A stretch of DNA of 64,000 bases from IMG/VR virus record IMGVR_UViG_3300024308_000188, positions 1 to 64,000 of that record. One strand, 5' to 3'. Below the pieces are notes generated by a model. That model saw nothing but the letters and a program-made list of their open reading frames with translations, had not been told where the DNA came from and searched no databases. Positions 4,375-55,081 of the stretch are shown here, in pieces. A program made the position numbers and the translations under genes. Within the stretch, counting starts at the first letter, position 1, and each line of letters begins with the position of its first letter.

Positions 4375-4638
4375 TTATTGTTTTGTCAGCATCTTAAGAT
4401 CTACAATGTTACCCAACAAAGATTCTTTGACTATCTTAAGTGCATCAATCCTTCCAACAATTTCATGAGCCATCATTTCACTGGCTTGTGTGCCTCGACT
4501 CTTAAGAGCGCGTAATTTTTTATCACTTGCCTTAATCGCATCATTTATAAGTTGCAGTGTTTCAGGAGCTGTTGTAGTTAGTGCAGCTATTTGTTTTGCA
4601 CTAGCTGATTCAGATAGCAAAAGTTGCTTCTTTTTCAT
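4375..4638 (-). CDS. Small helical protein with S-x-S leader (putative head protein)
   Basis: N-terminus MKKKQLLL-SES-ASAK. Confidence 0.6.
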   Translation of the reverse strand: MKKKQLLLSESASAKQIAALTTTAPETLQLINDAIKASDKKLRALKSRGTQASEMMAHEIVGRIDALKIVKESLLGNIVDLKMLTKQ

Positions 4639-5129
4639 AATGATTTATTTCCCTTTATAATGCTCTTTTTAAGAATACCAACAGTTCTTATGTCGTTGTA
4701 TTTTCCTTCAAGTGCATCTATATGAGTGTAGCCAGACTTCAATAACAATTCAGCAAGTTTTGGCTCAGACTGATACCACTCCCAAACTTTTTTATGGCCA
4801 CCATGATTTAATGAATTTAACTCATTGTACAGTGTCAGCGCTTTATCTTTTGATACAAGGTTAAATTTTTTATAGGAATCTATAATACCTTGTTTTATTC
4901 TGGAAATGATTTCACTAAAGGTCACTTGAGCATCAAGTGTACGAAAGCCAAAATTAAATCCTTGACCTAAGTTTATGTCATATTCCATTAAATGTCCGCC
5001 ATATTGCAAAGCATATTTGGCATCTTGTGTGACCCAAATTATATGAGTTCTATTTTGATATTCTTCAGAAAACTTTCCTTCAATACCACGATAGAATTTT
5101 TCACCAGATAAGCTGATTAAAATTTTCAT
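4635..5129 (-). CDS. ADP-ribosyltransferase-like (ART-PolyVal-type) protein with S-x-S leader
   Basis: MKILI-SLS-G leader, then FYRG...IWVTQDAKYALQYG..LMEYDINL and a C-terminal GYTHID. This resembles the Y[HR]G / [FW]xTxD..YA..Y pattern of phage ART-like domains. Confidence 0.5.
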   Translation of the reverse strand: MKILISLSGEKFYRGIEGKFSEEYQNRTHIIWVTQDAKYALQYGGHLMEYDINLGQGFNFGFRTLDAQVTFSEIISRIKQGIIDSYKKFNLVSKDKALTLYNELNSLNHGGHKKVWEWYQSEPKLAELLLKSGYTHIDALEGKYNDIRTVGILKKSIIKGNKSL

Positions 5130-5131
5130 TA

Positions 5132-6333: not shown

Positions 6334-8001
6334 TTAATCCTTAGCTACTTTGTTGATTGCTTTTTGAATAGTGCTGTTTGGACGAGCACCAACTTTCTCA
6401 AACCATTCTTTAATTAAGTTTGGATCAATATAGTTTTGAATTGCAGTAGTAGCAGTTACTTTTTCACCGTTAACATGACCTAATTCTTCACCAACTTTTT
6501 TCATGGCCTCAATAAACCATTTATTTATTTCGGCTTCAGATTTACCACGGAAAGCCGGAGCTTTATCAAGAACAGCACCTGCAACAATGGTTCCACGGGC
6601 ATGTCGGAATTTGTGAAGTGTAATGCTTTGATCTACACCTAACGAACGCAAATATTTATTTACGTAAGTACCATTCACATGTTTAACAGCACGACCGAAT
6701 TGAGCAGTCATTATTAAATCATTTGGCTTTTTACCTTCAACCAAACTATCTAATAACCCCTTCATCATTTTGCCTTCAGGCTTATTAGTATGTATTTTAT
6801 GAATTTGTTTAACGCCACTCTTGCCCAAATAATTCAATGTGAAATATCCGGTTCCACGAGAAGTATAGTTTTTACATACCAACGTGCTAATGCCTTGACC
6901 ACTTTGACCAGCAGTACCAATACGAGCAGAGGTTTCGTAAATAAGTTCAAGAATTAAAGCAGATACAGTGTCAGCATCTTCATAATGACCTGTCTTTAAT
7001 TCATGCAACCATTTTTTACGGGCAGCCGGAAGATCTTTTATTAGTGCATCAACAGTGTTAAACTTTTTACCCGCCTTCTCTTTGCGATACTCAACTGTGT
7101 AAATACGTTGAGGCTGCCCAGTACCAAACAGTGGATAGTGAAGGAAAACATAAGTGTTATCCAATTCAGGATCGTACTTAGGATTTGCTTCTAAGCGGCC
7201 TGTTATAGCACCATCAAGTTTTACTTTGTTCGTGTTGTAATAAGCACCGTTTTCATCAACGTAACCATTGAATCCTTCAGGCACTTTGCTACGAATTTTG
7301 TTCTGCTTTAGATAGCGAACTAACTCTGTAGCCTTAACAAGCTTTTCACCACTTTGTCTGACAAAGCTTAATGTTGCTTGCTTTGTCCCTTCGTTAATGT
7401 CCCGCATTAATTTCAGGAAAACTTTATACTGTTCAGGTTTTTTGTCACGTAACGAATTTTTATCTTCGACAGTTAAGTCGGCTTCAGGCTTACCGAAGAT
7501 TTTACGGCAGAATTTATTAAGTTCTGCAACTAAATCTTGTTGGTTACTTTGCTCAGCATCTTCGTGAAGGAAAACAGCTGTTAGATCAGGATCACCAAGT
7601 TTACTAATATGACGAGTAAGATTTTTTAAACTTGCGTCACTCCCACGAAGTACAATACCCATCATATACTTCAAAAGATCAATATGGTCTTTGGTAAGAT
7701 CCAACTCTTTTGTAAGCATACCAGCTTTTTCACGTTCTTTCAGAACACGAATTAAAGCATCAAGATCCCAATCCATATCGGCATTGTCGTTTAAGCAGCC
7801 ATTTACTATAGGATTGAAAGTTGATCTTGGAATACGAAATCTTTTCAAAAATTCTTCGGCGTCTGAATTCCACTTACGGATCTTAGATTTAACTTTAGCG
7901 CCCAAAGGTTCTTCAATCAAACACACCATTATTGAACTGGCTACAAGTTTGATGAATGATTCTGTAGAGTTTTTACTCACAGCAGAAATTGAAATAATCA
8001 T
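6334..8001 (-). CDS. DNA topoisomerase IB with N-terminal extension and S-x-S leader
   Basis: Catalytic pentad in order: ARIG, YLGKSG, HKFRHARGT, LGH, IQNYIDP. N-terminus MII-SIS-A. Confidence 0.88.
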   Translation of the reverse strand: MIISISAVSKNSTESFIKLVASSIMVCLIEEPLGAKVKSKIRKWNSDAEEFLKRFRIPRSTFNPIVNGCLNDNADMDWDLDALIRVLKEREKAGMLTKELDLTKDHIDLLKYMMGIVLRGSDASLKNLTRHISKLGDPDLTAVFLHEDAEQSNQQDLVAELNKFCRKIFGKPEADLTVEDKNSLRDKKPEQYKVFLKLMRDINEGTKQATLSFVRQSGEKLVKATELVRYLKQNKIRSKVPEGFNGYVDENGAYYNTNKVKLDGAITGRLEANPKYDPELDNTYVFLHYPLFGTGQPQRIYTVEYRKEKAGKKFNTVDALIKDLPAARKKWLHELKTGHYEDADTVSALILELIYETSARIGTAGQSGQGISTLVCKNYTSRGTGYFTLNYLGKSGVKQIHKIHTNKPEGKMMKGLLDSLVEGKKPNDLIMTAQFGRAVKHVNGTYVNKYLRSLGVDQSITLHKFRHARGTIVAGAVLDKAPAFRGKSEAEINKWFIEAMKKVGEELGHVNGEKVTATTAIQNYIDPNLIKEWFEKVGARPNSTIQKAINKVAKD

Positions 8002-11640: not shown

Positions 11641-12189
11641 TTAATCTATCCAAATTTGATCTTTAGGCATTTCTAAGACATTTCCTTTGGAACCATCTTC
11701 GTTCAATACCATGACTCGACATTTCTCGCTGAGCGGCAGAATATAAAGCAAAATACCCTTCTTCTTTTGACCAGCTGGCCCGTATGTAACAGGTAGGTGC
11801 AAGTTATCTTGCTCACGACCACGAACAGCAATACGAATATTCAAAGAATGTACGCCTTCGTAATCTTTAATGATTTCACCTATCCATTTACGTGCGGCCA
11901 ATACTTGTTCATCAGCAACTTTTAAAATACTGCAATTGCCAAAGAACATTAGCAGACCTTGCTTTAAATCTTTCGTATCTAATTGAGTTTCTGGAAGATT
12001 AGGGCCAGCTGAACTCACAAGATAATTCTTTTGTCCCATCTTAGCAAAGTTTGCAGTAGCATTTTTCATTTTATTTGTCCAACTTACTGCATACATATTT
12101 CTGTCAGCACGTTGTACTTTAAGATGCAGAGGCCCGAACGACTGCTCAATACGAATAGCCTTACTGGATAGACTAATTAATATTCTCAT
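11641..12189 (-). CDS. Hypothetical protein with S-x-S leader
   Basis: N-terminus MRILI-SLS-SK. Confidence 0.65.
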   Translation of the reverse strand: MRILISLSSKAIRIEQSFGPLHLKVQRADRNMYAVSWTNKMKNATANFAKMGQKNYLVSSAGPNLPETQLDTKDLKQGLLMFFGNCSILKVADEQVLAARKWIGEIIKDYEGVHSLNIRIAVRGREQDNLHLPVTYGPAGQKKKGILLYILPLSEKCRVMVLNEDGSKGNVLEMPKDQIWID

Positions 12190-13216: not shown

Positions 13217-13217
13217 A

Positions 13218-14640: not shown

Positions 14641-15062
14641 GCCTTCTCAATTCGTGACATAATAGCTTTGTGAGTATAGGAAACGTAAGTAAAATACTCA
14701 GCCTTTATATCTGTTTTCCCTGCACGATAAATAATGCTAGAATTTTGATCGTAAATTTGAGTACGTCTGAATTTCTCAGCAGGATCATAAAGAATTTGAG
14801 TACCAAGAACAATGATTGCTCTTATGTTATCGCCAGATTCTGTTTCCAGCACAACAAGCTTTGTTTTTGCGTCATTAATATTTTGCATTTCAATGACGCA
14901 AAGTGCAAGCGCTTTAACTCGTGAGTCACGTTCACTGGCTAAGAGTCTGCGATCTTTAATTAAGAGAACAGCGCGTGTAAGTAAAGATGAAATATCAAGC
15001 GAACGAGGTTCAACACTACTAATGGAAAGAAAGCGTTTTAATGGTATTAGAATATTCATCAT
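14637..15062 (-). CDS. Hypothetical protein with extended S-x-S leader
   Basis: MMNILIPLKRFL-SIS-SV, RBS GGAG. Confidence 0.6.
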   Translation of the reverse strand: MMNILIPLKRFLSISSVEPRSLDISSLLTRAVLLIKDRRLLASERDSRVKALALCVIEMQNINDAKTKLVVLETESGDNIRAIIVLGTQILYDPAEKFRRTQIYDQNSSIIYRAGKTDIKAEYFTYVSYTHKAIMSRIEKA

Positions 15063-15115: not shown

Positions 15116-15991
15116 TTATTCCAGTTCATCTTCTGTGTAAGCTTCAGCAGCAGCTTTTTTAGCTGTGTTGAAGTTAGTCATAGTGCTCAAGCCTACAGTC
15201 ATTACTTTGCCACTTGGCAATTTAACATACAACGTCTGGCCTGAAATAGATTTACCTAACACGATGTTAGAAGTTTTGATACCGGCTTCTGTCAGCATCT
15301 TGACAACTTCTTTCGCCAGAAGGCCATATTCTTTTGCTTTGGCTGCGCGATTTTTATCCGCAACTTTTCCAGCAGCTTCTTTAGTCGCAGGAACTTTTTT
15401 GATGTGACTGTTAAGTGCAGAAGCAGCAGCTTTCATTTTCTTTTCCAGCGCGGCAGACAAAACGCCGTTAGCATAAATAGGAAGAATTTGAGTTGCTGTC
15501 TCAGTCATTTTGCTACGCAAAGAAACTGCGATTGCCCGTTTCTTCATGTAATTTGGTTCTTTGGCTTTAGCGCGAGCCGCACTATACTGCATGGCTTTGC
15601 TACGTTTCGGAACAGTGTAATATCCCATTGGTGCAGGAACAACACTTGATTTGCCAAAAGCGGCAACAGCTTTTTCAGCAGTGGCTTTATCTTCACACAA
15701 AAAGTTTAATGTGAACTTACCAGCTTCGCCTTCGATCTTAACTTTACCGTCAGCTGTATGCGGCTTGATAACAGCACTTAAGGTTACTGCCTCTTTACGC
15801 ATTTTAACCGGAGCAACAACACTCACGGAAAAACCATCACGCGATTTTTTGATGGTAGAGATTGGCTTCATGTTACGTAAATAAGATTCAATGTCTTTAC
15901 GTACAGCCAAAATGTTTGGCAGATTAGCCAAACCATCAGCAGCTAAATAAGTGTTACCTGCATTCAGACTTACCAAACTTTCGATTTTCAT
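15116..15991 (-). CDS. Basic Lys/Ala-rich protein with leader variant (putative internal head/DNA-binding protein)
   Basis: MKIESLV-SLN-AG, RBS AGGA, candidate promoter upstream. Confidence 0.65.
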   Translation of the reverse strand: MKIESLVSLNAGNTYLAADGLANLPNILAVRKDIESYLRNMKPISTIKKSRDGFSVSVVAPVKMRKEAVTLSAVIKPHTADGKVKIEGEAGKFTLNFLCEDKATAEKAVAAFGKSSVVPAPMGYYTVPKRSKAMQYSAARAKAKEPNYMKKRAIAVSLRSKMTETATQILPIYANGVLSAALEKKMKAAASALNSHIKKVPATKEAAGKVADKNRAAKAKEYGLLAKEVVKMLTEAGIKTSNIVLGKSISGQTLYVKLPSGKVMTVGLSTMTNFNTAKKAAAEAYTEDELE

Positions 15992-39689: not shown

Positions 39690-40346
39690 TTAACCAAAAT
39701 TCTTGAAAACCTGAGCAAACACTTTCATGTAATCTTTACGAATGCCGTGTTTGTATATACGAATAAGAATAGGTTCATATAACTCAAGAACTTTATGCAA
39801 TTCGGTTACAGCAGCCGAATACGTAACTTGAGATAAAGAACTTTGACCGCTGTTTGACATATCCAAATAAAACTTAGCGCAAGCGTATAACAGATTAGCT
39901 ATATTTTCGCTTTTAAAGTTTGCGATCATTCTAACACTATCAAGTAACTCTCTGCGAAGTTTTGAAGCTACTTCTATATACTGGGTTTCATTATTCGCTT
40001 GTATTAGTGAAGGATTGGCAATAAGTGAGGTAGAACATTTTGCTATAAATTCTTTAACCCACTCGCTATCTTTACTTTTCCACGGAGAAGTACCGTATAA
40101 AATTCTGCGTTTGAGATTTGAGATTTCAAGATCAAACTTTGCAACCTCTTCCTGAAGATTTCGTTTACGAGTATTAAAGCTTTTATCACTTTCTATTTCG
40201 TTTGCGTCCTGAGTTGTGGCGTTTACCACACGGTCGATTTCACCTAAAGCACGTACTACGGATTGACGCTCAAGGTACAACGCGCAAATTCTTTGAAACT
40301 CTTCATCTTCTTGACTTGATTCTGAAATGAATACACGAATTTTCAT
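39690..40346 (-). CDS. Helical protein with S-x-S leader
   Basis: N-terminus MKIRVFI-SES-SQ. Confidence 0.7.
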   Translation of the reverse strand: MKIRVFISESSQEDEEFQRICALYLERQSVVRALGEIDRVVNATTQDANEIESDKSFNTRKRNLQEEVAKFDLEISNLKRRILYGTSPWKSKDSEWVKEFIAKCSTSLIANPSLIQANNETQYIEVASKLRRELLDSVRMIANFKSENIANLLYACAKFYLDMSNSGQSSLSQVTYSAAVTELHKVLELYEPILIRIYKHGIRKDYMKVFAQVFKNFG

Positions 40347-42518: not shown

Positions 42519-42851
42519 CTACCAAAGATCGTTGTATGCCCAATACGCAGCTTGCCATTTATCTTTATAAGCTGGCTTACCATTAGACTTTAAGATGCCA
42601 CGAAATCTTTTGCGAAAATTTTCTCTACGTTCAGGATCTTTGTGAGTAGTGAAATCTTCATAGTCAACATGGCCATACTTTATTAGTTTAAAATTATTTC
42701 CTTTACGTGCTAATACCGCACGTTTGTAGCGCTTATCCTTTATTTCAATGGGTTTATCAAAATCAATGAAAGTCATTCCCTTGTATACAAGTTTACCATT
42801 TTCTTTTTGAATACTGTCTACACTTGTACAAAGACTCACAAGAATTTTCAT
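42519..42851 (-). CDS. Tlr6F/DUF5754-like small basic protein with leader variant
   Basis: MKILV-SLC, then KLIKYGHVDYEDFTTHKDPERRENFRKRF...AAYWAYNDLW. Confidence 0.65.
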   Translation of the reverse strand: MKILVSLCTSVDSIQKENGKLVYKGMTFIDFDKPIEIKDKRYKRAVLARKGNNFKLIKYGHVDYEDFTTHKDPERRENFRKRFRGILKSNGKPAYKDKWQAAYWAYNDLW

Positions 42852-43042: not shown

Positions 43043-43645
43043 TTACTCTTCCGCTTGAACTTTACTTAGCTTACTTAAAAGCTGTCTACCAAGCTGATTC
43101 TTAAATTTATCCAACTTACCAGGAGTCTTTAAAACATCCAAAGCTTTCTGGTGAGCAAGCTTTAACTCTTTGTAGTTATCTCGTTCACGCTCAAAAGTAG
43201 CTAAAGCTTTCTTTTTGGCGATAGGATTAGTTGCGTTTTCTGCATCTTTCTTTGCTTTCAACGCTCTATTTTTGTGACTTTCCAGTGAAGCAGTTGTTTC
43301 TTCACTATCAGCATCCAAACCAAACTCTTCCATAGCGCCAGAAAATCTTTTGGCGAAACTTTGCTGCAAATCGTCATCCAGTTTAGATACTTCTTTTAAT
43401 AGATTAGGATCTAAACCTTTAGATGCTTCTGCAAATCTAGGATCTAAGCCGGATGCGAATTGGCCAGTCCTTGATTTACGTTCCTTATGTTTTGCCATAC
43501 GCATATGATGTTTAGCGTACTGACTATTTGGATGTTCTTCAATATATTCTTTTTTAGCTTCGTCTGAAAGTTCATCAAACCAATTGGAGCCTCCAATTTT
43601 TTTAGGTTTGTTATTTGAAGAGCTAATAAATACTTTGATTTTCAT
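43043..43645 (-). CDS. Protein with S-x-S leader and WFxxLS...YIxxHPxS motif
   Basis: MKIKVFI-SSS-N, then NWFDELSDEAKKEYIEEHPNSQYAK. Confidence 0.7.
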   Translation of the reverse strand: MKIKVFISSSNNKPKKIGGSNWFDELSDEAKKEYIEEHPNSQYAKHHMRMAKHKERKSRTGQFASGLDPRFAEASKGLDPNLLKEVSKLDDDLQQSFAKRFSGAMEEFGLDADSEETTASLESHKNRALKAKKDAENATNPIAKKKALATFERERDNYKELKLAHQKALDVLKTPGKLDKFKNQLGRQLLSKLSKVQAEE

Positions 43646-43682: not shown

Positions 43683-44510
43683 TCATACATCAAACTTTTT
43701 CTGTGCAGCAGCTGAAGTAAAGAACCAATTATATCCTTTAAGGACTCTTTTGGTTACAGGATCTTTAGCTGACCACGTAAGAATCTTTGAGCGTTTACCT
43801 GCTAATACAGCAAAAATCGAAGCGGTTTCACCGATCTTTGGTCTGACTGAACGGGCTTCACTTAAAGTTTTTTTCTTTGTTTCTTTACCTTCAATAACAA
43901 CTAAATAACTATAGCCTTGTGCTTTAAGTTCAGCACGTTTCTTAGCGGATTCCGCATCGTGTATAGCATCGTTACGCTTTTTCTGAACTCCAGCTAATTC
44001 TTCACGTTGTTTTTGAAGTTTAGCTATTTGTTCATCTAAGGCTTTTATGCGTTGTTTGTCTTTTGCCTCAGTTTTGTTAAAGAATGCTGTTGTATCTTTA
44101 GAATTTGTAGTAAGTGTTATACTCTGACTTCCAACATCTTCTTTTGTTATTTTGTTTCCGATTAAACTCAAAAGTTTAGCTTTAGTTAATGTTAAAGTTG
44201 ATAAATTGCCGGGATGCTTACGTGTAAGAGAATTGTCACGCTCTGCAACAGCAACTATGGATTTAACTGATCCAGATTTAGTGCTATTCACTTCGGTTAT
44301 ACGATAGTTAGTGGCCGCCTTTGTTATAACAGGAGGCATCTTTTTGTAGCGCTCTATAGTTTCTTTCGGAATAAAGCCAATGCTCGGTCTTGGTGGAGTC
44401 TTTTTAGTTGATACTATTGTATATAAAGTAAAAGTACCGCCAACAACAATTTTCTTTTCTTGGGCAGCAGTTAAATCTGCGCTCTCAGACAACATAACTT
44501 GAATTTTCAT
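43683..44510 (-). CDS. Basic protein with S-x-S leader
   Basis: N-terminus MKIQVML-SES-AD. Confidence 0.7.
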   Translation of the reverse strand: MKIQVMLSESADLTAAQEKKIVVGGTFTLYTIVSTKKTPPRPSIGFIPKETIERYKKMPPVITKAATNYRITEVNSTKSGSVKSIVAVAERDNSLTRKHPGNLSTLTLTKAKLLSLIGNKITKEDVGSQSITLTTNSKDTTAFFNKTEAKDKQRIKALDEQIAKLQKQREELAGVQKKRNDAIHDAESAKKRAELKAQGYSYLVVIEGKETKKKTLSEARSVRPKIGETASIFAVLAGKRSKILTWSAKDPVTKRVLKGYNWFFTSAAAQKKFDV

Positions 44511-44528: not shown

Positions 44529-44927
44529 TTATTTAAGAGAAGCACTTTTGGTGCCTTTCTTAGATTTAAGAGTAGCCTTTTCGCCGTTCAACAGTTTTGC
44601 CAAAGCAGCCGCAGATAAAGGTTTAATTTCATCTTTTGAATGTTTACCTTCTGGAGCAATCAACACTCTTTTTAATTTTCCGTTGCCAGCTATTTCAACT
44701 TCTTTGATGACAAGAGTATATTTGTTTAGTTGTGGAGTTACTTTGTTATCAGCCTTACGTGTGTAAGCACCTGTAACAACCATAAGAAGTTTCGTTCCTT
44801 TGGTCATAAGTTTTTTGATTTGTGACGAAGTAAATCTGTCGTCAGCCAACTGTCTGAATTTAGAGTCAGATGCTTTAAGTCTGGCCAAAGAGTACGAACT
44901 TTGCGAAACGAATACTTTGATTTTCAT
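44529..44927 (-). CDS. Basic protein with S-x-S leader
   Basis: N-terminus MKIKVFV-SQS-SY. Confidence 0.7.
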   Translation of the reverse strand: MKIKVFVSQSSYSLARLKASDSKFRQLADDRFTSSQIKKLMTKGTKLLMVVTGAYTRKADNKVTPQLNKYTLVIKEVEIAGNGKLKRVLIAPEGKHSKDEIKPLSAAALAKLLNGEKATLKSKKGTKSASLK

Positions 44928-44936: not shown

Positions 44937-45857
44937 TTAAATTTTAATTAAGCGATCACCAGTTGGATTTCCGTTAATTAAAAAGTTGTTATCGAAGTAT
45001 TGTTTTGCAAGTTCCCAACCATCTGTGCAGCTTAAACCACGTTCAGATTTACCGTGAACCATATACTCACACAATGTAGCCCAAGCTTCTTCATACCAAG
45101 GATAAGTATATCCTGCATGATTAAATTGATCTGGATGCAAACGTCTTGCAACCAAAGCTTGTTTGTAACGCTCCATCTGAGATTGACGTACAATGCCATC
45201 ATACATTAAAAAGTGAGCAAGCTCGTGCGTGATAACTTGAGCAAGGAATCCTGAAGTTATTGCACCTGAACGTAAGCCTTGAAGTTGATTGAAGTTCAGA
45301 ACAAGCAACTGACGCGCTTTTATAGAGGCATCGGTTTGACGACTGAAGCAAGTAGGTACTACATCAGATTTACACAGAATAAAATGATTTAAGTTGATCT
45401 TCTTCTTAAATCCTGTGTAATCTAAAGCTTGATTTACGGCCTTACGCTCAATGTCAGCTAATGGGTAGCACCATTCATTTCTTCTGCGTTCAAGATTTTC
45501 CTCAAGAAAACCTATTGCTAATGGATGCGCTTTTTTAATTGCAGGAGGTTGAAGAACAACACGGTAGTTGTAATTCAATGTTGCACTTTCGCTAACAATA
45601 TCCTTAGAGTCAATGGCAACAGGTTTAATGTTGTTTAGTGTAATCCAAACAGAATCGAACAAAGCAGGATCGCCATTAAGCATTAAGCTTTTTTCAACAA
45701 GATCTCGCAAAGTACGTTCATCAACTACAGCAACAGCGCCTTTGTCATCACGAATTTTAATACGTGAATCTAAGTACACATGCCAGAAATGATTACGCTC
45801 TATTTTAAACCATTCACCTAATTGGAATGGAGTATCTGAATTGTATCTGAATTCCAT
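44937..45857 (-). CDS. Zincin-like metallopeptidase
   Basis: VITHELAHFL followed by YEEAWATLCE. Internal IV-SES-A precedes the catalytic region. Confidence 0.7.
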   Translation of the reverse strand: MEFRYNSDTPFQLGEWFKIERNHFWHVYLDSRIKIRDDKGAVAVVDERTLRDLVEKSLMLNGDPALFDSVWITLNNIKPVAIDSKDIVSESATLNYNYRVVLQPPAIKKAHPLAIGFLEENLERRRNEWCYPLADIERKAVNQALDYTGFKKKINLNHFILCKSDVVPTCFSRQTDASIKARQLLVLNFNQLQGLRSGAITSGFLAQVITHELAHFLMYDGIVRQSQMERYKQALVARRLHPDQFNHAGYTYPWYEEAWATLCEYMVHGKSERGLSCTDGWELAKQYFDNNFLINGNPTGDRLIKI

Positions 45858-46651
45858 TAGCGCACCATCATAATGTTTTTAGGATCGTGTTGGTTACTTA
45901 CGTAAGCCGGATTTTCAACTTGGCTGCATTCAAAACCAGTTGAATCGTGACACCAACGGTAAACAATTTGCCCATCTTTCAAGTACGGCTTGCGACCTAA
46001 ACGAGTATGTGAACAAGTTAACATAGTGTCTTGGTGGGTAGTGTGGCCGCAATAACTGCAAGTGTAACTTGTGTAATAAAATCCTACGCTATGCGTATTG
46101 CATTCGTTTGTCAGAATGCGATTACAGATTTCAGGATCACGAGTACGATCATATGCCAACAGCAGAATTAATTTTGCGTGATTGTTACGGAAACCACGAA
46201 GCGGTTTTAAATAAGCATCTAAAATAATGCCACGCGCTTTGGTGTGATCCTGATTATCATGTTCGCGGAAAGTTGGTTTACCTTTGTAAGTTTTGTATGC
46301 TTGCATACCCAACTTAGGTTTGAACTGTAACAACTCACTCAAGCTTGCACTATCGCCATTTGTATTTGGCAGATCTGTGATTAATGCCGGAGTAGGAACC
46401 ATTACATAATCACGAATATCAGGACTTGTGTTGTAAACTTTTGCAGCGGCTGGAAGCCAAGCATTAACATCAAGTACAACACCCTCACAGCCACCAACCA
46501 TTTCTGGTTTAGCTGTGATTGCCATATTGTTTTTTGAAAGTTTGTGCAGATCTATACCGCGACCTTCACCTTCACGAACTGAATAACGGCCAATATCAAA
46601 AGAAGAAGATACAAACTTACCTATATCCGTATTTAACTTAACAGGAACCAT
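45857..46651 (-). CDS. Prohead (maturation) protease with CxxC insertion
   Basis: GKPTFREHD (His), GIILDAY, HSVGF (Ser) and FECSQVENPAY fit the caudoviral/herpes-fold prohead protease pattern. ATG at 46651 after AAGGAG. Confidence 0.75.
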   Translation of the reverse strand: MVPVKLNTDIGKFVSSSFDIGRYSVREGEGRGIDLHKLSKNNMAITAKPEMVGGCEGVVLDVNAWLPAAAKVYNTSPDIRDYVMVPTPALITDLPNTNGDSASLSELLQFKPKLGMQAYKTYKGKPTFREHDNQDHTKARGIILDAYLKPLRGFRNNHAKLILLLAYDRTRDPEICNRILTNECNTHSVGFYYTSYTCSYCGHTTHQDTMLTCSHTRLGRKPYLKDGQIVYRWCHDSTGFECSQVENPAYVSNQHDPKNIMMVR

Positions 46652-46664: not shown

Positions 46665-47210
46665 TTAATCAATGTTTTCAGCAATTTGCTGCTCTAAGCG
46701 TTTTTGCTGAGCAAGCAACAGTGTGGGATTACGTTTAAATTTCTGACCATCAGTAAATATGTAATCAGAAATAAGATCGATGCCTTTATTTTGTTCGATA
46801 AAGTGTTTGCAAATAACGTCAAGATAAGCAAACATTTCTACAAGACTTGCAAGAGGAAATTCTTTACGTATTTCCAACTCAACACGGTTACGCAAACTAT
46901 TGAATAAGTTGTATAACTCGTGTTTGTTATTGTGGCCGCTTAAGCTTGCTTGATAAGCTTGCTGTAAACTTTCTAAATCGCTGGCAAGCTTTCCTTGAGT
47001 AAATTCACTGTTACCCGCAGGAACAACAGCGACTTTCATTTCTTTAAGTGCTTGCTTACCTAAGAAATCTATTTGCTCAACAGCTCTTTTAACATCAAGT
47101 TGTTGATTTGGCGGAAAGCATTGAAGTGCAGCCATATAAACAGGAGTCTGGTAGCCTTTTACAATAGCACTGACACCTGATGTACTTAAAAACAATTTAG
47201 CTTTTTTCAT
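46665..47210 (-). CDS. Helical protein with S-x-S leader
   Basis: N-terminus MKKAKLFL-STS-GV. Confidence 0.65.
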   Translation of the reverse strand: MKKAKLFLSTSGVSAIVKGYQTPVYMAALQCFPPNQQLDVKRAVEQIDFLGKQALKEMKVAVVPAGNSEFTQGKLASDLESLQQAYQASLSGHNNKHELYNLFNSLRNRVELEIRKEFPLASLVEMFAYLDVICKHFIEQNKGIDLISDYIFTDGQKFKRNPTLLLAQQKRLEQQIAENID

Positions 47211-48904
47211 AAAAATTCCTTGTCTATGTTCAATTTAGCCCAAGCATAACATTCATCAAATGTTTGTTTGATTGGCTGAACAAGATAAATTTTTCCGCGT
47301 TTGATAAGTGTGTACGGTTGATCATTTTTAATTGGACGACCTGAACGATATACGCTTTCGTCAAATCCATCCTCTAACACACATATCCATTTACGTGAAA
47401 ATTTTCCGCCGGTTGTTTTGTCAACACAACGAATATTTCCTATAATACGATTTCCAAAGCGTAAGTTATAGCGCCAGCGTTGATCAACAGGAAGTTTGGC
47501 GCATTCTTTATCGCAGCGTAGTGTAAGCTTTTTAGGCTTATCGTCAGAAACTTCAACATAAAGCTGTTCGTAATCTTCATCAGAGTCATCAGAACTATTG
47601 GACACAAGTTCTTCTATTTCTTGACGAGGACTTAAAACAGCGTCAAGTTCGTCATCGGATAAATCACTAAGCTTTGGTTGCCAACCTTCGGCCTTCATTT
47701 CTTCTATAGCAATGTATTCAGAGATCTTACGTGCAATCAAATCTAAATCTTGATCTTGTAACCACACAGCAAAATCAGCTGTTAAGAATTCAACAGGATC
47801 ATCTTCAATTTCTGCATCAGAAGATTTACTTTCCAATTCCTCTGGAGCTTTTTCAGAAGCAGGTTCTTCTTCCTCTAAACTTTTATGTGCATTTTCCAGC
47901 ATACGATCAAGTTCTGAATCGTCATCTTCAAAATCTAGATCGTCTTTTTCTTTAACTGGCTCAGTCTTAACTTCTTCCACTTTAGTTTCAGAAGGAACTG
48001 TCTCTTGTTGATTACTTGTATCAGTGCTTTCCTGCGCTTTGGTTTCAGTAGAGTTCTGTTCAACTTCAGCTGGATTTTCTTGCTCTTGTTGTGGAACAGG
48101 AATATCTTTTTTACGTGAACGTGGAATAGTTGATTTATAATCACGGAAACCAAGATAAGCGGCAGTCAATGCTCCAGCTATAACAGCAGCACCTGAAAAA
48201 ACTGCTACTAACGCACCTAAGCCTAATGCAACTTCAGCAAGACCAAAACCTACATCACGAGCAACTTGTTCACCTTTAGAATCATTCTTGGTACTCATTC
48301 CCTTAGATTTTGCTTTAAGGTAAGAACCTAATTCTTTTTTCTTTGCAGGTGATAATTGATCGCTTATGGCACTAGCAACAGATTTTACTTTATTGCTAAA
48401 TTTGGATGTCTGTTCTGCGATTGTAGATCTGACTTGTGGAAATTTATCGTTTGCTCTGCGATCAATTTCGTCACGAGTTACACGTTCTATAGCAACCGCT
48501 AATTCTTCTGGAGATCTTTTCTTACGTTTTAAAATTGGAGCAACAGCTTTACGTAATCTGCTAAAAATACTTTCCTTCTTTTTAGCAGGATCTACAGGAG
48601 TCAGTGGAGGAACCAAATCAACTTCAGGCTCTGGAACTTCAAGTTCCGCTATATCCTGATCAAGTTCTTCAGGTTCAACGTCAACTGCTTTATTCGCACG
48701 TTCCGCCTTCTTTTTAGCCAGACGTTTTTTCTGCGCTTCTTTTTCACGCAGGTATTTGGCAAGTTGACTTGTTTTGTGTTTTTCCAGATACTTCTTTTGC
48801 TGATTGGTGGATAATTTTTTCCACCAATCAGGCTCTTTAGTTATTTTTCTTGCGGATTCAGATACAAACAATGAATCCACTAGATCAAGTTGTACTTTCT
48901 TCAC
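47207..48904 (-). CDS. Multidomain protein with leader, WWxxLS...YLxxH motif and a hydrophobic (TM-like) segment
   Basis: LFV-SES-AR, DWWKKLSTNQQKKYLEKHKTSQLAK, GFGLAEVALGLGALVAVFSGAAVIAGALTAAYLGF. Confidence 0.7.
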   Translation of the reverse strand: MKKVQLDLVDSLFVSESARKITKEPDWWKKLSTNQQKKYLEKHKTSQLAKYLREKEAQKKRLAKKKAERANKAVDVEPEELDQDIAELEVPEPEVDLVPPLTPVDPAKKKESIFSRLRKAVAPILKRKKRSPEELAVAIERVTRDEIDRRANDKFPQVRSTIAEQTSKFSNKVKSVASAISDQLSPAKKKELGSYLKAKSKGMSTKNDSKGEQVARDVGFGLAEVALGLGALVAVFSGAAVIAGALTAAYLGFRDYKSTIPRSRKKDIPVPQQEQENPAEVEQNSTETKAQESTDTSNQQETVPSETKVEEVKTEPVKEKDDLDFEDDDSELDRMLENAHKSLEEEEPASEKAPEELESKSSDAEIEDDPVEFLTADFAVWLQDQDLDLIARKISEYIAIEEMKAEGWQPKLSDLSDDELDAVLSPRQEIEELVSNSSDDSDEDYEQLYVEVSDDKPKKLTLRCDKECAKLPVDQRWRYNLRFGNRIIGNIRCVDKTTGGKFSRKWICVLEDGFDESVYRSGRPIKNDQPYTLIKRGKIYLVQPIKQTFDECYAWAKLNIDKEFL

Positions 48905-50948: not shown

Positions 50949-51413
50949 CTATTCGTTGTCTAAGTTTACAATCAAATGAGAAAGAAATGGGCGCAATTTT
51001 GCATTAAGTTTTTTCAAAGCATCTTTGGCTTCAAACCATTTGCGAACGCGCATATCTTTTTCTGGAAACTTTTTGTACATATTCTCTACCTTAAGGCCGT
51101 ACACAGTTACTTTTTGAGCAACACCAGTAGATCCTTTGCGGTAAGAGTATTGGCCGAGATTGAAGGTAACATCACCATCGACTCCGGCTTCTTCCCAAGC
51201 TTCAACTTCAGCACTTTCTTTTTTGCCCAAGTCTTTTTCTTTTTTACCTTTTGGTATGCCCCAGTTTCCAGCATGGCGTGAACTAATTAATAAAATATGT
51301 AACACGCCCTTTTTATCGTAAGCATAAGGTATAACACCAGTCTGTTTACGAACACGTTCACCAGCAGCCAAACTTTTTAAAGGTATGTTCAATTGGATTC
51401 TGCGTTTTTTCAT
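50949..51413 (-). CDS. Nudix hydrolase (DIPP/Ap6A-like subfamily) with leader variant
   Basis: LLISSR...WGIPKGKKE...AEVEAWEEAGVDG Nudix box. ATG at 51413 gives MKKRRIQLNIPLK-SLA-AG. Confidence 0.88.
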   Translation of the reverse strand: MKKRRIQLNIPLKSLAAGERVRKQTGVIPYAYDKKGVLHILLISSRHAGNWGIPKGKKEKDLGKKESAEVEAWEEAGVDGDVTFNLGQYSYRKGSTGVAQKVTVYGLKVENMYKKFPEKDMRVRKWFEAKDALKKLNAKLRPFLSHLIVNLDNE

Positions 51414-53379: not shown

Positions 53380-53380
53380 G

Positions 53381-55081
53381 TCAACTCTCAATAGGTTCTT
53401 TATTTTTTGTTAGTGTGTCAGCTAAACTTTGTTTTTCAATCAACTGACGAACCGGAAGCTTGCGAACAAATTCGGCCATATCTTCGATTCTACGTTTCTG
53501 ACGTTTATCAATACGTACAGTACGATAGTCATCAGGCTCGTTGGTCAAATCATAAAGTTTGTAGATGATAATGTGATCGCTACCTTCCATAGTAGATATG
53601 TCGAAAATCAAGAATTCCCGTTGTTCACTGCGATCATTATTGAACTTTATGATCGAACCTTCTTCAAAATCTTTAACGACTTTTTTCACTTCAGGTTCTT
53701 CAAGCTCTTTAATAGCAGTATCTACTTCTGAATCATCAGTATCTAAATCAACTGGATCTTCATCTTCAACCAATTCTTCTTCCGGTTCCTCAACAACTTC
53801 ATCTTCAAACTCTTCTTCAGATTCTTCCTGATCTTCATCGGACTCGTACTCTACTTCTTCGTCTGCCTCAAGATCATCAACAGTTTCTTCTTCAGCAAAT
53901 TGAGAAAGATCCAGTTTAGGTTTTGGTATAGTCTTTTTAAGATCGGAAATTGCCTGTTCAAACATTTCAGCAACTTCTACTTTTTTCGCTTCGCGCTCAG
54001 GTTCATCCTTTTTATTGAACTCACCTTCTATCTGAAGATTGTCAAGATCTAAATTCAAATCGAAATCTTCTTCATCAGCCAAATGATCAACACGCAAGCC
54101 AAGATCTTCAGCGTTAACTAAACGTCTACGTTTAATCTGCTTGGCAATTTCCTTGTCAGACATTTTAACTGTTTGGGATTTACGAACTTTAATCATGTGT
54201 TCTTCAAGAGTTTGCAAATGAGCTTTAGCATCTTCAGCTTCTTGTTTACGTCTTTGACGTTCAGCCGCACGTTTCTCACTTAACTCCTGAATTTGCTTAC
54301 GTTTTGCAGCAGCTTCCCGTTCACGAATTAATTGACGTTCCCTTGCTCTCTTTTCTTTTTCACGCAAACGCTGTTCTTCCATACTGTTTTCCATATCAGC
54401 CTTGGTGAATCCACCTTCAGGCCATTTATTTTTTGGTAAAACAGTTGTCATTGAAAGAATTATGTCATAGGTGTCAAGGTTAATAGCGAACCGATTAAAA
54501 TTCTGATCTATTAACACTCCACCAGTGGCAGGTTTTATAAAGCGAATGCCAAACACATCACCACGTTTGTAGTGAATTTTTTTATCAGCTTTCTTTACGG
54601 TAAAGCCTGAAGGATCACCAACTCTACGCCATTGGTAATTGGCAAAATTTACACCTTCTTTTGCTTCAGCATTAACAGCACGAGCGGCTTTAAAATAAGC
54701 CGCATCCCATGCACGATTGTCGGATTGTTTATTGATAACCCGAACAATCTTGCCGTCTTGACCTGCTAAATTTTTAATAGCAGGTCTTTTGACTTTTTTA
54801 CTGTTCTCCAGAAGTTTGTTAGCTTCTTTTTGAGTTATTGCAAAATTTACATGGTATAAATCAGGAAGCACAACATAAAAGTTGCCGCTTCTGGCAGCGC
54901 GAATACCATAAATATCGTTCTGAGTTATAGTGCGAGTATGACTACGCTGGACAATTTTTATTCCACGAGATCCATGAAATCTATGCCAAGAAAAATCATC
55001 AAGTTCATCATATTTAGCACTAAGAGAAAGCAAGTTAGAAACCGATAACGGATTTAAGTTGAAACGAAGTTTTTTCATCAA
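53381..55081 (-). CDS. Multidomain protein with leader, two shared [DN][FY]xW...D[IV][FY]GIR domains, coiled coil and acidic tract
   Basis: LL-SLS-AK, DFSWHRF...DIYGIR and NYQWRR...DVFGIR. Confidence 0.7.
   Translation of the reverse strand: MMKKLRFNLNPLSVSNLLSLSAKYDELDDFSWHRFHGSRGIKIVQRSHTRTITQNDIYGIRAARSGNFYVVLPDLYHVNFAITQKEANKLLENSKKVKRPAIKNLAGQDGKIVRVINKQSDNRAWDAAYFKAARAVNAEAKEGVNFANYQWRRVGDPSGFTVKKADKKIHYKRGDVFGIRFIKPATGGVLIDQNFNRFAINLDTYDIILSMTTVLPKNKWPEGGFTKADMENSMEEQRLREKEKRARERQLIREREAAAKRKQIQELSEKRAAERQRRKQEAEDAKAHLQTLEEHMIKVRKSQTVKMSDKEIAKQIKRRRLVNAEDLGLRVDHLADEEDFDLNLDLDNLQIEGEFNKKDEPEREAKKVEVAEMFEQAISDLKKTIPKPKLDLSQFAEEETVDDLEADEEVEYESDEDQEESEEEFEDEVVEEPEEELVEDEDPVDLDTDDSEVDTAIKELEEPEVKKVVKDFEEGSIIKFNNDRSEQREFLIFDISTMEGSDHIIIYKLYDLTNEPDDYRTVRIDKRQKRRIEDMAEFVRKLPVRQLIEKQSLADTLTKNKEPIES

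What the first reader, a model, noticed from the sequence alone, without database searches (positions are those of the whole stretch)
4375..55081. Shared N-terminal leader (M-K-hydrophobic strand-S-x-S) on about 20 unrelated proteins: a putative portable capsid-targeting/cleavage tag
Seen in sequence (start coordinate: N-terminus). 4638 MKKKQLLL-SES-A; 5129 MKILI-SLS-G; 8001 MII-SIS-A; 12189 MRILI-SLS-S; 15062 MMNILIPLKRFL-SIS-S; 28029 MKILV-SLS-V; 37012 MII-SLSVS-A; 40346 MKIRVFI-SES-S; 41775 MKIRVFT-STS-A; 42510 MKVNILI-SES-A; 43645 MKIKVFI-SSS-N; 44510 MKIQVML-SES-A; 44927 MKIKVFV-SQS-S; 47210 MKKAKLFL-STS-G; 48904 MKKVQLDLVDSLFV-SES-A; 55081 MMKKLRFNLNPLSVSNLL-SLS-A. Variants: 15991 LV-SLN-A, 42851 LV-SLC-T, 51413 LK-SLA-A, 27693 VV-SAT, 20788 AL-SVA, 3139 VFV-AKA. 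Most of these proteins are unrelated after the leader. Ligase, GroEL, Acb1, MmcB, HDOD, GNAT, sheath, tube and fibre proteins lack it. Established: T4 internal proteins carry a short N-terminal capsid-targeting sequence removed by gp21 after Glu, and phiKZ/SPN3US head proteins are cleaved at S/A/G-x-E. Inference: this is an analogous address-plus-cleavage code with a Ser-ending motif. It would let the phage load arbitrary cargo into the prohead and eject it into the cell. I do not know of it being described for this phage group. It could also be an engineering handle.
Basis: partly seen in the sequence, partly recalled or inferred. Interest (0 to 1): 0.92.

Follow-up and report, generated by a model that had tools for sequence, protein, structure and literature searches.

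The report
Shared cleavable leader on phage cargo
About a quarter of the genes in this stretch of a giant bacteriophage genome begin with the same short leader peptide, which most likely is the cutting site (and probably the loading address) used by the phage's head-maturation protease to process proteins carried inside the capsid; it resembles a mechanism known from phage T4 but uses a different, undescribed recognition rule.

Summary
Sixteen of 67 genes carry hydrophobic-hydrophobic-S-x-S within the first 25 residues, against 1.8% of internal windows (P about 1e-13). The Ser codons mix TCN and AGY, so selection acts on the protein, and most cargos are unrelated to one another.

The window comes from a jumbo myophage of the Lu11/PaBG/NCTB/Dickeya/Erwinia ('Lupandier') group. 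Its prohead serine protease gene (45857-46651) lies inside the densest cluster of tagged genes.

Several lines tie the motif to that protease:
- The protease's own N-terminus carries it in nearly all of about 35 distinct relatives, as (S/A)-x-(S/A)|F.
- The major capsid protein carries it at a position that predicts a 20.7% mass loss in PaBG; about 20% is published.
- In phage G, whose gp19 shares the protease fold, the N-terminally sequenced capsid protein starts after V-A-L-A.
- A-type and S-type clades switch leaders, protease site and capsid site largely together.

Tagged proteins are basic, and an AlphaFold model leaves the leader disordered up to the cut. Next to the protease the cargo turns over between genomes while the leader persists.

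Best reading: a T4-CTS-like propeptide with a 'small-x-small' rule instead of Glu. Cleavage is inferred indirectly, and packaging and ejection are untested. I found no description of it in the searchable literature. It is a new variant of a known kind.

The parts
45857..46651 (-). Prohead (head maturation) serine protease gene. ATG at 46651; the longest ORF starts at TTG 46684.
   Evidence: phrog_18299 'head maturation protease', E = 7e-88. AF2 model pLDDT 80.7. Foldseek top PDB hit is T4 gp21 5jbl (E = 0.08). 62 BFVD hits at E <= 1e-3, many named prohead serine protease/COG3740. H131 and S188 invariant in 22-23 homologs.
46601..46615 (-). The protease's own N-terminal motif, F-V-S-S-S|F (cut predicted after residue 17).
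   Evidence: (S/A)-x-(S/A)|F is conserved in nearly all of ~35 distinct homologs, with S-type and A-type clades. The segment is disordered in the model.
31629..32723 (-). Major capsid protein gene (ATG at 32723).
   Evidence: phrog_2522 major head protein, E = 2e-82. Syntenic with the annotated MCPs of AD1, PaBG and Y3.
32499..32513 (-). MCP site 2, F-L-S-L-S|AEQK (after residue 75): the predicted maturation cleavage.
   Evidence: Aligned PaBG site EAVAA|AEAR predicts a 20.6-20.8% mass loss; about 20% is published. Small-x-small in most clades.
32619..32636 (-). MCP site 1, A-A-L-S-S-N|GEINA (after residue 35).
   Evidence: L-S-x-S/N | (T)GE(I/V/F)NA is conserved family-wide. Whether it is cut is unknown.
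40317..40346 (-). Leader MKIRVFISES|S of g40346 (39690-40346, 218 aa, ORFan).
   Evidence: singleton cargo.
41746..41775 (-). Leader MKIRVFTSTS|A of g41775 (40555-41775, 406 aa, ORFan).
42481..42510 (-). Leader MKVNILISES|A of g42510 (41833-42510, 225 aa).
42828..42851 (-). Variant leader MKILVSLC|T of g42851 (42519-42851, 110 aa; DUF5754; matches part of phrog_220 'minor head protein and DNA pilot').
   Evidence: The L011 ortholog reads ...LVSTS|K.
43616..43645 (-). Leader MKIKVFISSS|N of g43645 (43043-43645, 200 aa).
   Evidence: carries the post-leader module.
44481..44510 (-). Leader MKIQVMLSES|A of g44510 (43683-44510, 275 aa).
   Evidence: orthologs in L011 and L012 are tagged.
44898..44927 (-). 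Leader MKIKVFVSQS|S of g44927 (44529-44927, 132 aa).
47178..47210 (-). Leader MKKAKLFLSTS|G of g47210 (46665-47210, 181 aa).
48854..48904 (-). Leader MKKVQLDLVDSLFVSES|A of g48904 (47207-48904, 565 aa; conserved 'WWKK' family).
   Evidence: Orthologs keep a leader in every clade, S-type or A-type.
55019..55081 (-). Leader ...NLLSLS|A of g55081 (53381-55081, 566 aa; KMPT-N family).
   Evidence: In the AF2 model, residues 1-21 have pLDDT < 50 and the fold starts at residue 23. BLAST matches to relatives start at residues 21-24.
36995..37012 (-). Leader MIISLS|V of g37012 (35969-37012, 347 aa; PaBG gp83 family).
   Evidence: PaBG gp83 is an MS-detected virion protein. The paralog g38763 lacks the leader.
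7984..8001 (-). Leader MIISIS|A of g8001 (6334-8001, 555 aa; type IB topoisomerase).
   Evidence: Pfam PF01028, E = 1e-15. The PaBG ortholog starts MHTSLS|A.
4606..4638 (-). Leader MKKKQLLLSES|A of g4638 (4375-4638, 87 aa).
5106..5129 (-). Leader MKILISLS|G of g5129 (4635-5129, 164 aa).
12166..12189 (-). Leader MRILISLS|S of g12189 (11641-12189, 182 aa).
15018..15062 (-). Leader MMNILIPLKRFLSIS|S of g15062 (14637-15062, 141 aa).
28006..28029 (-). Leader MKILVSLS|V of g28029 (27700-28029, 109 aa; mature part has pI 11.4 and 31% K+R).
   Evidence: The NCTB ortholog reads ...IPSES|VTYEDIG.
27670..27693 (-). Variant leader MLIVVSAT|N of g27693 (27013-27693, 226 aa; KMPT-N domain).
   Evidence: Pfam PF20294, E = 3e-12. 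Orthologs read MLISLS|A, MLILLSES|A, MLFFVSVS|A.
51366..51413 (-). Variant leader ...IPLKSLA|A of g51413 (50949-51413, 154 aa; NUDIX hydrolase).
   Evidence: The NUDIX domain starts at residue 28. Orthologs: AD1 MMINVSLS|A, L012 ...LESTS|A.
15962..15991 (-). Variant leader MKIESLVSLN|A of g15991 (15116-15991, 291 aa).
   Evidence: P1 = N, as in MCP site 1. Weaker case.
3110..3139 (-). Variant (A-type) leader MKVKVFVAKA|T of g3139 (2747-3139, 130 aa).
   Evidence: Weaker case.
35784..35864 (-). Possible longer leader ...AIIVHGAS|E of g35864 (33507-35864, 785 aa; PaBG gp82 family, next to the MCP).
   Evidence: A conserved G-I-V-V-x-small-small segment at residues ~15-27 in orthologs, plus three internal strict motifs. 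Tentative.

Best explanation
The leader is an N-terminal propeptide. It has a Met, usually one to three basic or polar residues, a 3-5 residue hydrophobic beta-strand-like stretch (P6-P4), and then small-x-small (here S-x-S) followed by a small P1' residue (A/S/G).

The phage's own HK97/gp21-fold prohead serine protease (45857-46651) recognises small-x-small and cuts after the second small residue inside the assembling prohead. The same enzyme trims its own N-terminus and removes about 75 residues from the major capsid protein.

Proteins that carry the leader are head-internal proteins. They are mostly small, basic and fast-evolving, and include a few enzymes (type IB topoisomerase, NUDIX hydrolase; in PaBG a 221 kDa helicase-like protein). 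By analogy with the T4 capsid targeting sequence, the hydrophobic part of the leader probably also holds the protein on the prohead core until cleavage releases it, so the cargo stays in the capsid with the DNA and can leave with it at infection.

Shown here: the motif, its enrichment, protein-level selection, its presence on the protease and capsid protein across the family, its agreement with two published measurements, and cargo turnover.

Inferred: that the bond after P1 is cut, that this protease does it, that the leader targets cargo, and that the cargo is ejected.
For: (1) Enrichment and protein-level selection.

(2) The protease gene sits inside the densest tagged cluster (11 of 21 genes within +/-10 kb), next to the capsid gene module.

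(3) The protease fold is a prohead serine protease. Top PDB hit is T4 gp21. There are 62 viral-model hits, many named prohead protease. His131 and Ser188 are invariant.

(4) The protease's own N-terminus carries (S/A)-x-(S/A)|F in nearly all of ~35 distinct homologs down to 38% identity. T4 gp21 likewise carries its own cleavage motif near its N-terminus (PMC9026906).

(5) The MCP carries the motif. Site 2 predicts a 20.6-20.8% mass loss in PaBG against 'about 20%' published; site 1 would give 9%.

(6) Phage G gp19 shares the protease fold (E = 4e-11). The phage G MCP is 282 aa and its mature form is 255 aa by N-terminal sequencing (PMC5646251). Residues 24-27|28 are V-A-L-A|Q, i.e. hydrophobic-small-x-small.

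(7) In A-type clades (L047, L049-L051, L048) the protease site, neighbouring leaders and MCP site 2 are A-x-A. In S-type clades they are S-x-S. GC content does not explain this.

(8) Internal strict motifs are concentrated in head-module proteins: 11 in 5,091 aa against 5 in 13,393 aa, P = 7e-4.

(9) Tagged proteins are basic, with median pI 9.5 against 6.0 (P = 1.3e-4), like the T4 internal proteins.

(10) The leader is a separable extension. It is disordered up to the cut in the AF2 model of g55081. The NUDIX domain begins at residue 28. Some orthologs and paralogs lack it.

(11) Cargo turns over while the leader persists. 47 of 141 families in 17 loci have a member matching the relaxed small-x-small leader pattern (a few of these are clear false positives, such as ligase and tail tube), and many of the strongly tagged ones are genome-specific singletons.

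(12) PaBG gp202 (MGSLFTLNSLS|A...) and gp83 were found in virions by MS. Sheath, tube, baseplate, fibre, ligase and GroEL proteins lack the leader.
Against: No direct evidence of cleavage or packaging exists for any tagged protein of this phage or a close relative. The two experimental anchors concern capsid proteins of distant relatives, and one (PaBG) is only a gel estimate.

The S/A co-variation is imperfect. L012 has an A-P-A|F protease site but mostly S-type leaders. MCP site 1 stays S-type in A-type clades. PaBG mixes both types. The clades are few, so the events are not many independent observations.

PaBG has the protease but no significant excess of leaders: 3/349 strict, and 16 relaxed against 9.7 expected. 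The large repertoire is therefore clade-specific.

Some tagged genes lie among non-structural genes (4375-15062) or in the tail module (27013-28029). The PDB match to gp21 is weak on its own (E = 0.08). Twenty or more packaged proteins encoded in 64 kb is a large number.
Confidence: 0.68

Rival explanations
1. The site is cut but does not target. The small-x-small site is cut by the prohead protease, but the short leader is not what brings the cargo into the prohead. Targeting would then rest on another element, such as the conserved post-leader module or the basic mature part binding DNA or scaffold, and the leader would be a disposable cap.
For: A second conserved module (W-W/F...K-K-x-Y-L-x-x-H-P-x-S) lies directly after the cut in a subset of tagged proteins. 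All 9 regex hits in 105,839 aa are at residues 21-48 of tagged proteins. The mature parts are strongly basic. In SPN3US most head proteins are not cleaved at all (PMC10052503), so packaging does not require a propeptide.
Against: Most tagged cargos lack that module and share nothing except the leader. The conserved hydrophobic P4-P6 strand and Lys/Arg at positions 2-4 go beyond what a P3/P1 cleavage rule needs. In T4 the targeting and processing determinants lie in the same 10 residues.
Confidence: 0.15
2. A different enzyme does the processing. The leader would be removed by a host or other phage peptidase with a -3/-1 small-residue rule (signal-peptidase-like, or a Prp-like enzyme as for the L27-mimicking leaders of Staphylococcus phage 80alpha capsid and scaffold proteins), not by the prohead protease.
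For: n-region/h-region/small-x-small looks like a miniature signal peptide, and A-x-A is the classical signal peptidase I rule (general knowledge). The precedent of a host enzyme trimming shared phage leaders is also general knowledge, not tested here.
Against: The hydrophobic stretch is only 3-5 residues and there is no lipobox Cys. Cargos include cytoplasmic-type enzymes such as topoisomerase IB and NUDIX. The motif also occurs internally in the MCP and 13-27 residues into the protease. Leaders, the protease's own site and the MCP site change type together between phage clades that infect related hosts. Known hosts are Gram-negative, which lack the L27 extension/Prp system (general knowledge).
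Confidence: 0.07
3. The resemblance is structural or compositional and there is no processing. 'MKI-V-F-x-S-x-S' would simply be a favoured first beta-strand plus turn, or a translation-friendly start (AAA/AUU-rich codons) in an AT-rich genome.
For: Lys at position 2 and A/U-rich early codons are common in AT-rich genomes. 'KI' alone is enriched at N-termini. MKIxV is a frequent beta-1 start in many folds (general knowledge).
Against: The invariant positions are the two Ser, encoded by both TCN and AGY. The motif is anchored to the S-x-S, not to the Met, with leaders of 6-21 aa. The 30%-GC phage G control gives 1/61. The leader is disordered and outside the fold in the model. Orthologs exist with and without it. 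The same motif occurs at non-N-terminal conserved sites in the MCP and the protease.
Confidence: 0.04
4. The leader marks a recombination cassette boundary. The conserved leader-coding DNA would mainly serve as a homology patch that lets cargo genes be swapped, and the peptide would be incidental.
For: Some leaders are identical at the DNA level over the first ~19 nt (40346 vs 41775). Cargo next to the protease turns over between genomes.
Against: Across the set the codons differ widely, including TCN/AGY switches, while the peptide is kept. Thirty nucleotides is very short for homologous exchange. This does not explain the protease and MCP sites. It could be a side effect, not an alternative.
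Confidence: 0.03

Closest known systems
Phage T4 capsid targeting sequence (CTS) of internal proteins IPI-III/Alt, cleaved by prohead protease gp21 (PMC9026906)
   Same: A short (10-19 aa) N-terminal leader shared by otherwise unrelated, mostly basic, non-essential, fast-evolving proteins. The leader ends in the cleavage motif that the protease also uses on the capsid protein and on itself. The protease shares the HK97/gp21 fold class.
   Different: T4 cuts after Glu in L/I-x-E; here P1 and P3 are small (S/A) and Glu is only one of several P2 residues. The protease is very distant from gp21 (no sequence-level match, weak fold match) and carries a Cys/His cluster. The number of tagged genes is much larger (16-21 in 64 kb against a handful in T4). 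Targeting and ejection are unproven here.
phiKZ / 201phi2-1 / SPN3US head-protein propeptides cut by gp175/gp245 at S/A/G-x-E (PMC9026906, PMC10052503)
   Same: A jumbo-phage head with many internal or ejected proteins. A small residue at P3. The protease self-processes. Redundant sites occur in head proteins.
   Different: P1 is Glu there and small here. Propeptides there are often long and protein-specific, not a shared 8-11 residue leader. The phage lineage is different: the PaBG paper places the Lupandier group far from the phiKZ-, Agrican- and Seoul-viruses.
Bacillus phage G capsid maturation (MCP gp27, 282 to 255 residues by N-terminal sequencing; PMC5646251)
   Same: The cleavage follows V-A-L-A|Q, which fits hydrophobic-small-x-small. 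Phage G gp19 is a fold-level homolog of the window's protease (Foldseek E = 4e-11).
   Different: Only the capsid protein site is documented, and I found no shared leader on other phage G proteins near the head module. I found no stated motif in the papers searched.
Herpesvirus assemblin and HK97-family (MEROPS S21/S77/S78, COG3740) capsid maturation proteases
   Same: The same fold class and a His/Ser catalytic pair. Assemblin cuts (V/L/I)-x-A|S, i.e. small P1 and P1' (general knowledge).
   Different: There P3 is hydrophobic rather than small. Substrates are scaffold and protease, not a large set of tagged cargo proteins.
Signal peptidase I '-3, -1' (A-x-A) rule and signal peptides
   Same: A basic start, a hydrophobic stretch, then small-x-small before the cut.
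   Different: The hydrophobic core is far too short for membrane targeting (3-5 residues). The motif is also used at internal sites of capsid protein and protease. Cargo is cytoplasmic-type.
Encapsulin cargo-loading peptides
   Same: A short portable peptide that directs unrelated cargo into an HK97-fold shell.
   Different: Those peptides are usually C-terminal, are not cleaved, and involve no protease.

Membership tests
T4-type capsid targeting sequence system | A short N-terminal leader shared by otherwise unrelated proteins | tested here: met
   16/67 genes carry it and the cargos are unrelated by BLASTP.
T4-type capsid targeting sequence system | The leader ends in the same motif the prohead protease uses on the capsid protein and on itself | tested here: met
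   At sequence level only. The motif sits at the MCP site that fits the published mass loss, and at the protease N-terminus across the family.
T4-type capsid targeting sequence system | Cleavage C-terminal to Glu in L/I-x-E | tested here: not met
   P1 and P3 are invariant Ser (Ala in other clades). Glu occurs only at P2, in 5/16 leaders.
T4-type capsid targeting sequence system | The leader is sufficient to bring foreign protein into the capsid, and the mature protein is found in virions and ejected | not testable with these tools
   The only hints are that PaBG gp202 and gp83 (leader-bearing) were detected in virions by MS.
T4-type capsid targeting sequence system | The protease is a gp21 (MEROPS S77) homolog | tested here: inconclusive
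   No sequence-level PDB hit. Foldseek top hit is gp21 5jbl, but at E = 0.08 and TM 0.34/0.49.
HK97-fold prohead serine protease (S78/S77/COG3740 class) | Fold similarity to known prohead proteases | tested here: met
   62 BFVD matches at E <= 1e-3, many named prohead serine protease or COG3740. PHROG head maturation protease, E = 7e-88.
HK97-fold prohead serine protease (S78/S77/COG3740 class) | Invariant His then Ser catalytic pair | tested here: met
   H131 and S188 are invariant in 22-23 homologs, 57 residues apart. The catalytic role is inferred, not shown.
HK97-fold prohead serine protease (S78/S77/COG3740 class) | Encoded with the capsid gene module | tested here: met
   About 13 kb from the MCP in the window and 4-5 kb from it in AD1 and Y3. 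In PaBG the two genes are far apart.
phiKZ/SPN3US-type head propeptide processing | S/A/G at P3 and Glu at P1 | tested here: not met
   The small P3 is met, but P1 is Ser/Ala and never Glu.
Sec/lipoprotein signal peptide | A hydrophobic core of about 7-15 residues, and a lipobox Cys for lipoproteins | tested here: not met
   The hydrophobic run is 3-5 residues with no Cys at +1.

The most novel reading that the evidence does not exclude
A whole family of widespread jumbo phages (aquatic, plant-pathogen and Pseudomonas hosts) uses a non-Glu, 'small-x-small' propeptide code read by a divergent, Cys/His-cluster-bearing prohead protease. In the window's clade this 8-11 residue code has become a general loading tag. 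It places a large, rapidly exchanging arsenal of 20 or more basic proteins and enzymes (type IB topoisomerase, NUDIX hydrolase, helicase-like protein, KMPT-N proteins) into the capsid for co-injection with the DNA. This would be the first CTS-type system outside the T4 group, with a much larger cargo set and a hypervariable effector locus next to the protease.
Probability: 0.45. Interest if true: 0.75.

Novelty: new variant of a known kind. Interest (0 to 1): 0.62.

Why it matters
If correct, it gives the cleavage rule of an uncharacterised branch of capsid maturation proteases. From sequence alone it would let annotators predict which of the many 'hypothetical' proteins of Lupandier-group jumbo phages are head-internal and potentially injected, including enzymes such as a type IB topoisomerase and a NUDIX hydrolase.

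It points to a hypervariable locus next to the protease as the place to look for host-takeover or anti-defence proteins. It also shows that the T4 'capsid targeting sequence' principle arose, or persisted, in a distant lineage with a different chemical specificity.

Like the T4 CTS, a short tag of 8-10 residues could serve as a handle for packaging chosen proteins into phage capsids.

The prediction is directly testable with cultured relatives (PaBG, AD1, Y3).

Tried and rejected
- Megablast of 20 kb against GenBank phages found nothing.
- Pfam and PHROGs give no function for most cargos.
- Sequence searches of the protease against the PDB, as a single sequence and as a profile, gave only chance hits.
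- A strict-motif census in PaBG showed no enrichment, and a relaxed census only a marginal one. A 'family-wide large repertoire' is therefore rejected.
- GC content as the explanation for S-type versus A-type clades is rejected. L048 is A-type at 39% GC, and the Erwinia/Dickeya clade is S-type at 50% GC.
- A DNA-level repeat or promoter explanation is rejected because of codon diversity.
- A planned fold test on g5129 was dropped because its apparent orthologs do not align convincingly. g55081 was used instead.
- GenBank product names and notes of the AD1, Y3 and Erwinia records were checked for MS-based 'structural protein' labels on orthologs of tagged proteins; none were informative.
- The AD1 paper has no proteomics.
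- The phiRSL1 virion paper is not held in the library.
- Eight of the ten allowed full-text searches found no description of the motif for this phage group, nor did targeted reading of the papers they returned.
- 20788 (MIALSVA) is rejected as a leader because its orthologs lack it.

Full report
**What the window is.** Almost all genes lie on the minus strand. There is no near-identical GenBank phage. The tail sheath protein is 45.6% identical to that of Phage NCTB and about 38% identical to those of Erwinia, Dickeya and Yersinia jumbo phages. [quoted passage not shown] An IMG/VR contig of 319.5 kb (UViG_3300033997_000243) is 100% identical over the protease locus and is probably the source. 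Gene order matches AD1, Y3 and NCTB: a large protein, a KMPT-N protein, ligase, glycosyltransferase, a variable cluster with the prohead protease, two to three head-module genes, the major capsid protein, then sheath, tube and baseplate.

**The observation.** All listed N-termini are present.
- The pattern [ILVFM][ILVFMT]S.S occurs in the first 25 residues of 16 of 67 genes, against 13 of 707 internal windows (P = 8e-14). Shuffling the N-termini gives 1.7 on average.
- An unbiased scan of about 33,600 gapped patterns puts fragments of this leader in all top places.
- Aligned on the S-x-S, the consensus is M-K-I-(K/R)-V-(F/L)-(I/L/V)-S-x-S | (A/S/G). P3 and P1 are invariant Ser. P4-P6 are hydrophobic, P2 is free (E, L, I, T, S, Q) and P1' is small. 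The cut position varies from residue 6 to 21.
- Both Ser positions use TCN and AGY codons, so the constraint is on the peptide.
- Fifteen of 16 starts have an RBS-like site.
- Leader-stripped proteins are unrelated by BLASTP, apart from three small groups.
- Controls are low: 3/349 in PaBG and 1/61 in an AT-rich phage G segment.

**Link to the head protease.**
- The gene at 45857-46651 matches PHROG 'head maturation protease' at E = 7e-88, and its orthologs are annotated 'prohead core protein protease'.
- An AlphaFold model built from 22 homologs (pLDDT 80.7) has T4 gp21 as its top PDB match. That match is weak (E = 0.08). The model also gives 62 significant matches to viral models, many named prohead serine protease or COG3740, plus homologs in PaBG, phiRSL1 and phage G gp19.
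- His131 and Ser188 are invariant.
- The gene lies inside the densest block of tagged genes, with 11 of 21 genes within 10 kb.
- Across 47 loci from IMG/VR (about 35 distinct sequences), the protease's own N-terminal region nearly always contains (S/A)-x-(S/A) followed by Phe: FVSSS|F, FQSSS|F, IRSES|F, MMSRS|F, FAPA|F, IATA|F, EAMA|F. T4 gp21 also carries its own cleavage motif near its N-terminus.

**Link to the capsid protein, and two experimental anchors.**
- The MCP has a family-wide L-S-x-S/N | (T)GE(I/V/F)NA site near residue 35.
- It has a second site near residue 75-80 that reads FLSLS|AEQK in the window, EAVAA|AEAR in PaBG, VHS-x-S| in Erwinia/Dickeya phages and IAVA|N in L049.
- The PaBG paper reports that the virion MCP is about 20% lighter than predicted. 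Cutting at site 2 predicts 20.6-20.8%, and cutting at site 1 predicts 9.3%.
- For phage G, Hua et al. give 282 residues for the precursor MCP and 255 for the mature protein by N-terminal sequencing. In the sequence, residues 24-27|28 are V-A-L-A|Q.
- Both measurements fit hydrophobic-small-x-small, with the cut after the second small residue.

**Comparative behaviour of the leader.**
- Orthologs in NCTB and AD1 carry it, for example MKIISIS|A, MKVFLSES|K, MVLSVS|A, MLILLSES|A, and MMINVSLS|A on a NUDIX hydrolase.
- Two conserved families keep a leader in almost every clade: the 'WWKK' protein upstream of the protease, and the KMPT-N protein. The leader is S-type in some clades and A-type in others (MLVAIA|A, MIIGLA|A, MFIALA|W), in step with the type of the protease's own site and of MCP site 2.
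- GC content does not explain the split.
- The correlation is imperfect (L012, PaBG, MCP site 1) and rests on few independent clades. I read it as a shared small-x-small constraint with clade preferences, not as proven co-evolution.
- The density of tagged genes near the protease falls from 11/21 (window) and 9-10/24 (L011) to 1-3/20 in Erwinia/Dickeya phages and about none in PaBG. A distant clade (L048) has its own block of small genes with M-(R/K)-K-hydrophobic-small leaders upstream of the protease.
- In 17 non-redundant loci, 47 of 141 protein families include a member matching the relaxed leader pattern; a few of those matches are clear false positives (ligase, tail tube). Many strongly tagged proteins are genome-specific singletons. 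This resembles the variable internal-protein loci of T4-like phages.

**Properties of the cargo.**
- Tagged proteins are basic, with median pI 9.5 against 6.0 for untagged ones (P = 1.3e-4). One (g28029) has a mature pI of 11.4.
- Identified cargos are a type IB topoisomerase (g8001; the PaBG ortholog begins MHTSLS|A), a NUDIX hydrolase (g51413; the domain starts at residue 28), KMPT-N domain proteins (g27693, g55081), and a DUF5754 protein resembling part of a 'minor head protein and DNA pilot' PHROG. The rest are ORFans.
- In PaBG, the 221 kDa helicase-like virion protein gp202 begins MGSLFTLNSLS|A. gp83, the ortholog family of tagged g37012, is also a virion protein.
- Sheath, tube, baseplate, fibre, ligase and GroEL proteins lack the leader.
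- Internal copies of the strict motif are concentrated in head-module proteins (P = 7e-4).
- In an AlphaFold model of g55081 the first 21 residues are disordered and the fold starts at residue 23, just after the predicted cut. BLAST matches to relatives also start at residues 21-24.

**Interpretation.** The most economical reading is that the prohead protease of this phage family cuts after small-x-small, and that in the window's clade this site sits at the end of a short hydrophobic leader placed on many head-internal proteins. By analogy with T4, the leader would also hold the cargo on the prohead core until it is cut. Cleavage, the identity of the enzyme, targeting and ejection are all inferred. 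Only the sequence facts and their agreement with two published measurements are shown. I put this at about 0.68. The main rival (0.15) keeps cleavage but places targeting elsewhere, for instance in the conserved module found just after the cut in some cargos. Processing by another peptidase, a purely structural or translational origin, and a recombination-patch role are each unlikely, for the reasons given under the rivals.

**Comparison with known systems, and novelty.** Functionally this is closest to the T4 capsid targeting sequence, and more loosely to the phiKZ/SPN3US propeptides. It fails the defining chemical feature of both (Glu at P1), and the protease is only a distant fold relative of gp21, so it should not be filed as a member of either. 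It works like them. The specificity resembles the small-P1 preference of herpesvirus assemblin and, formally, the -3/-1 rule of signal peptidase. Eight full-text searches and targeted reading, including the PaBG paper, the AD1 paper, the jumbo-phage comparative genomics paper and a 2026 review, turned up no description of this leader or of the cleavage rule for this group. Closed-access papers (Y3, phiRSL1) could not be read. I rate it a new variant of a known kind.

Noticed in passing
window 43043-43645 and 47207-48904; also L011:7835, L011:17247, L014:7917, L016:7342, L016:16899, L041:8688, L047:7992, L049:8241: A second short conserved module lies directly after the predicted cut in a subset of tagged proteins: (W)(W/F)..L....[KR][KR].Y[LI]..[HYF]P.S. 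All 9 regex hits in 105,839 residues are at residues 21-48 of leader-bearing proteins. It may be a core- or DNA-binding element, or a paralogous N-domain.
   Followed up: partly
window 45857-46651 (residues ~198-215 of the protease): The prohead protease family has an invariant C198, C201, C213, H215 cluster, which looks like a zinc-ribbon-like insertion. I am not aware of this feature in gp21 or HK97 proteases.
   Followed up: no
window 6334-8001: A type IB topoisomerase (Pfam PF01028, E = 1e-15) carries the leader MIISIS|A, and the PaBG ortholog gp84 begins MHTSLS|A. If packaged, it would recall the virion topoisomerase IB of poxviruses.
   Followed up: partly
window 8836-11631 (residues ~330-460): The 931-aa protein g11631 contains an internal KMPT-N-like segment homologous to the N-terminal domains of tagged g55081 and g27693. 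It is preceded by L-Y-V-T-S-S|D, a possible internal processing site.
   Followed up: partly
window 27700-28029: g28029 encodes a very basic small protein (mature 101 aa, pI 11.4, 31% Lys+Arg) with a leader. It lies between tail-module genes and its ortholog in NCTB is also tagged. It could be a DNA-condensing internal protein.
   Followed up: no
window ~37025-37040 and ~42865-42880 (upstream of g37012 and g42851): GGGCTTCGGCCC hairpins (GC stem with a TTCG loop) lie immediately upstream of the RBS of two tagged genes. They may be terminators or RNA-stability elements.
   Followed up: no
window 125-1732 (+ strand): A GroEL-like chaperonin gene is the only long gene on the plus strand in the window.
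   Followed up: no
window 59144-60445 and 60464-61555: Adjacent paralogous genes, 33% identical over ~426 aa (E = 8e-69), of unknown function.
   Followed up: no
L048:721-6151: A distant relative (protease 47% identical) has its own run of about eight small genes upstream of the protease. They start M-(R/K)-(K/F)-hydrophobic strand-small residues, e.g. MKKITVRFVSNA|A and MRFVAIA|K. This suggests independent expansion of tagged cargo.
   Followed up: partly
window 33507-35864: The 785-aa protein next to the MCP (PaBG gp82 family, misannotated there as ribosomal-like) has a CxxC...CPxC motif, a conserved G-I-V-V-x-small-small segment near residue 20 and three internal strict motifs. It is not the portal, which in PaBG is gp106. 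Its role is unknown.
   Followed up: partly
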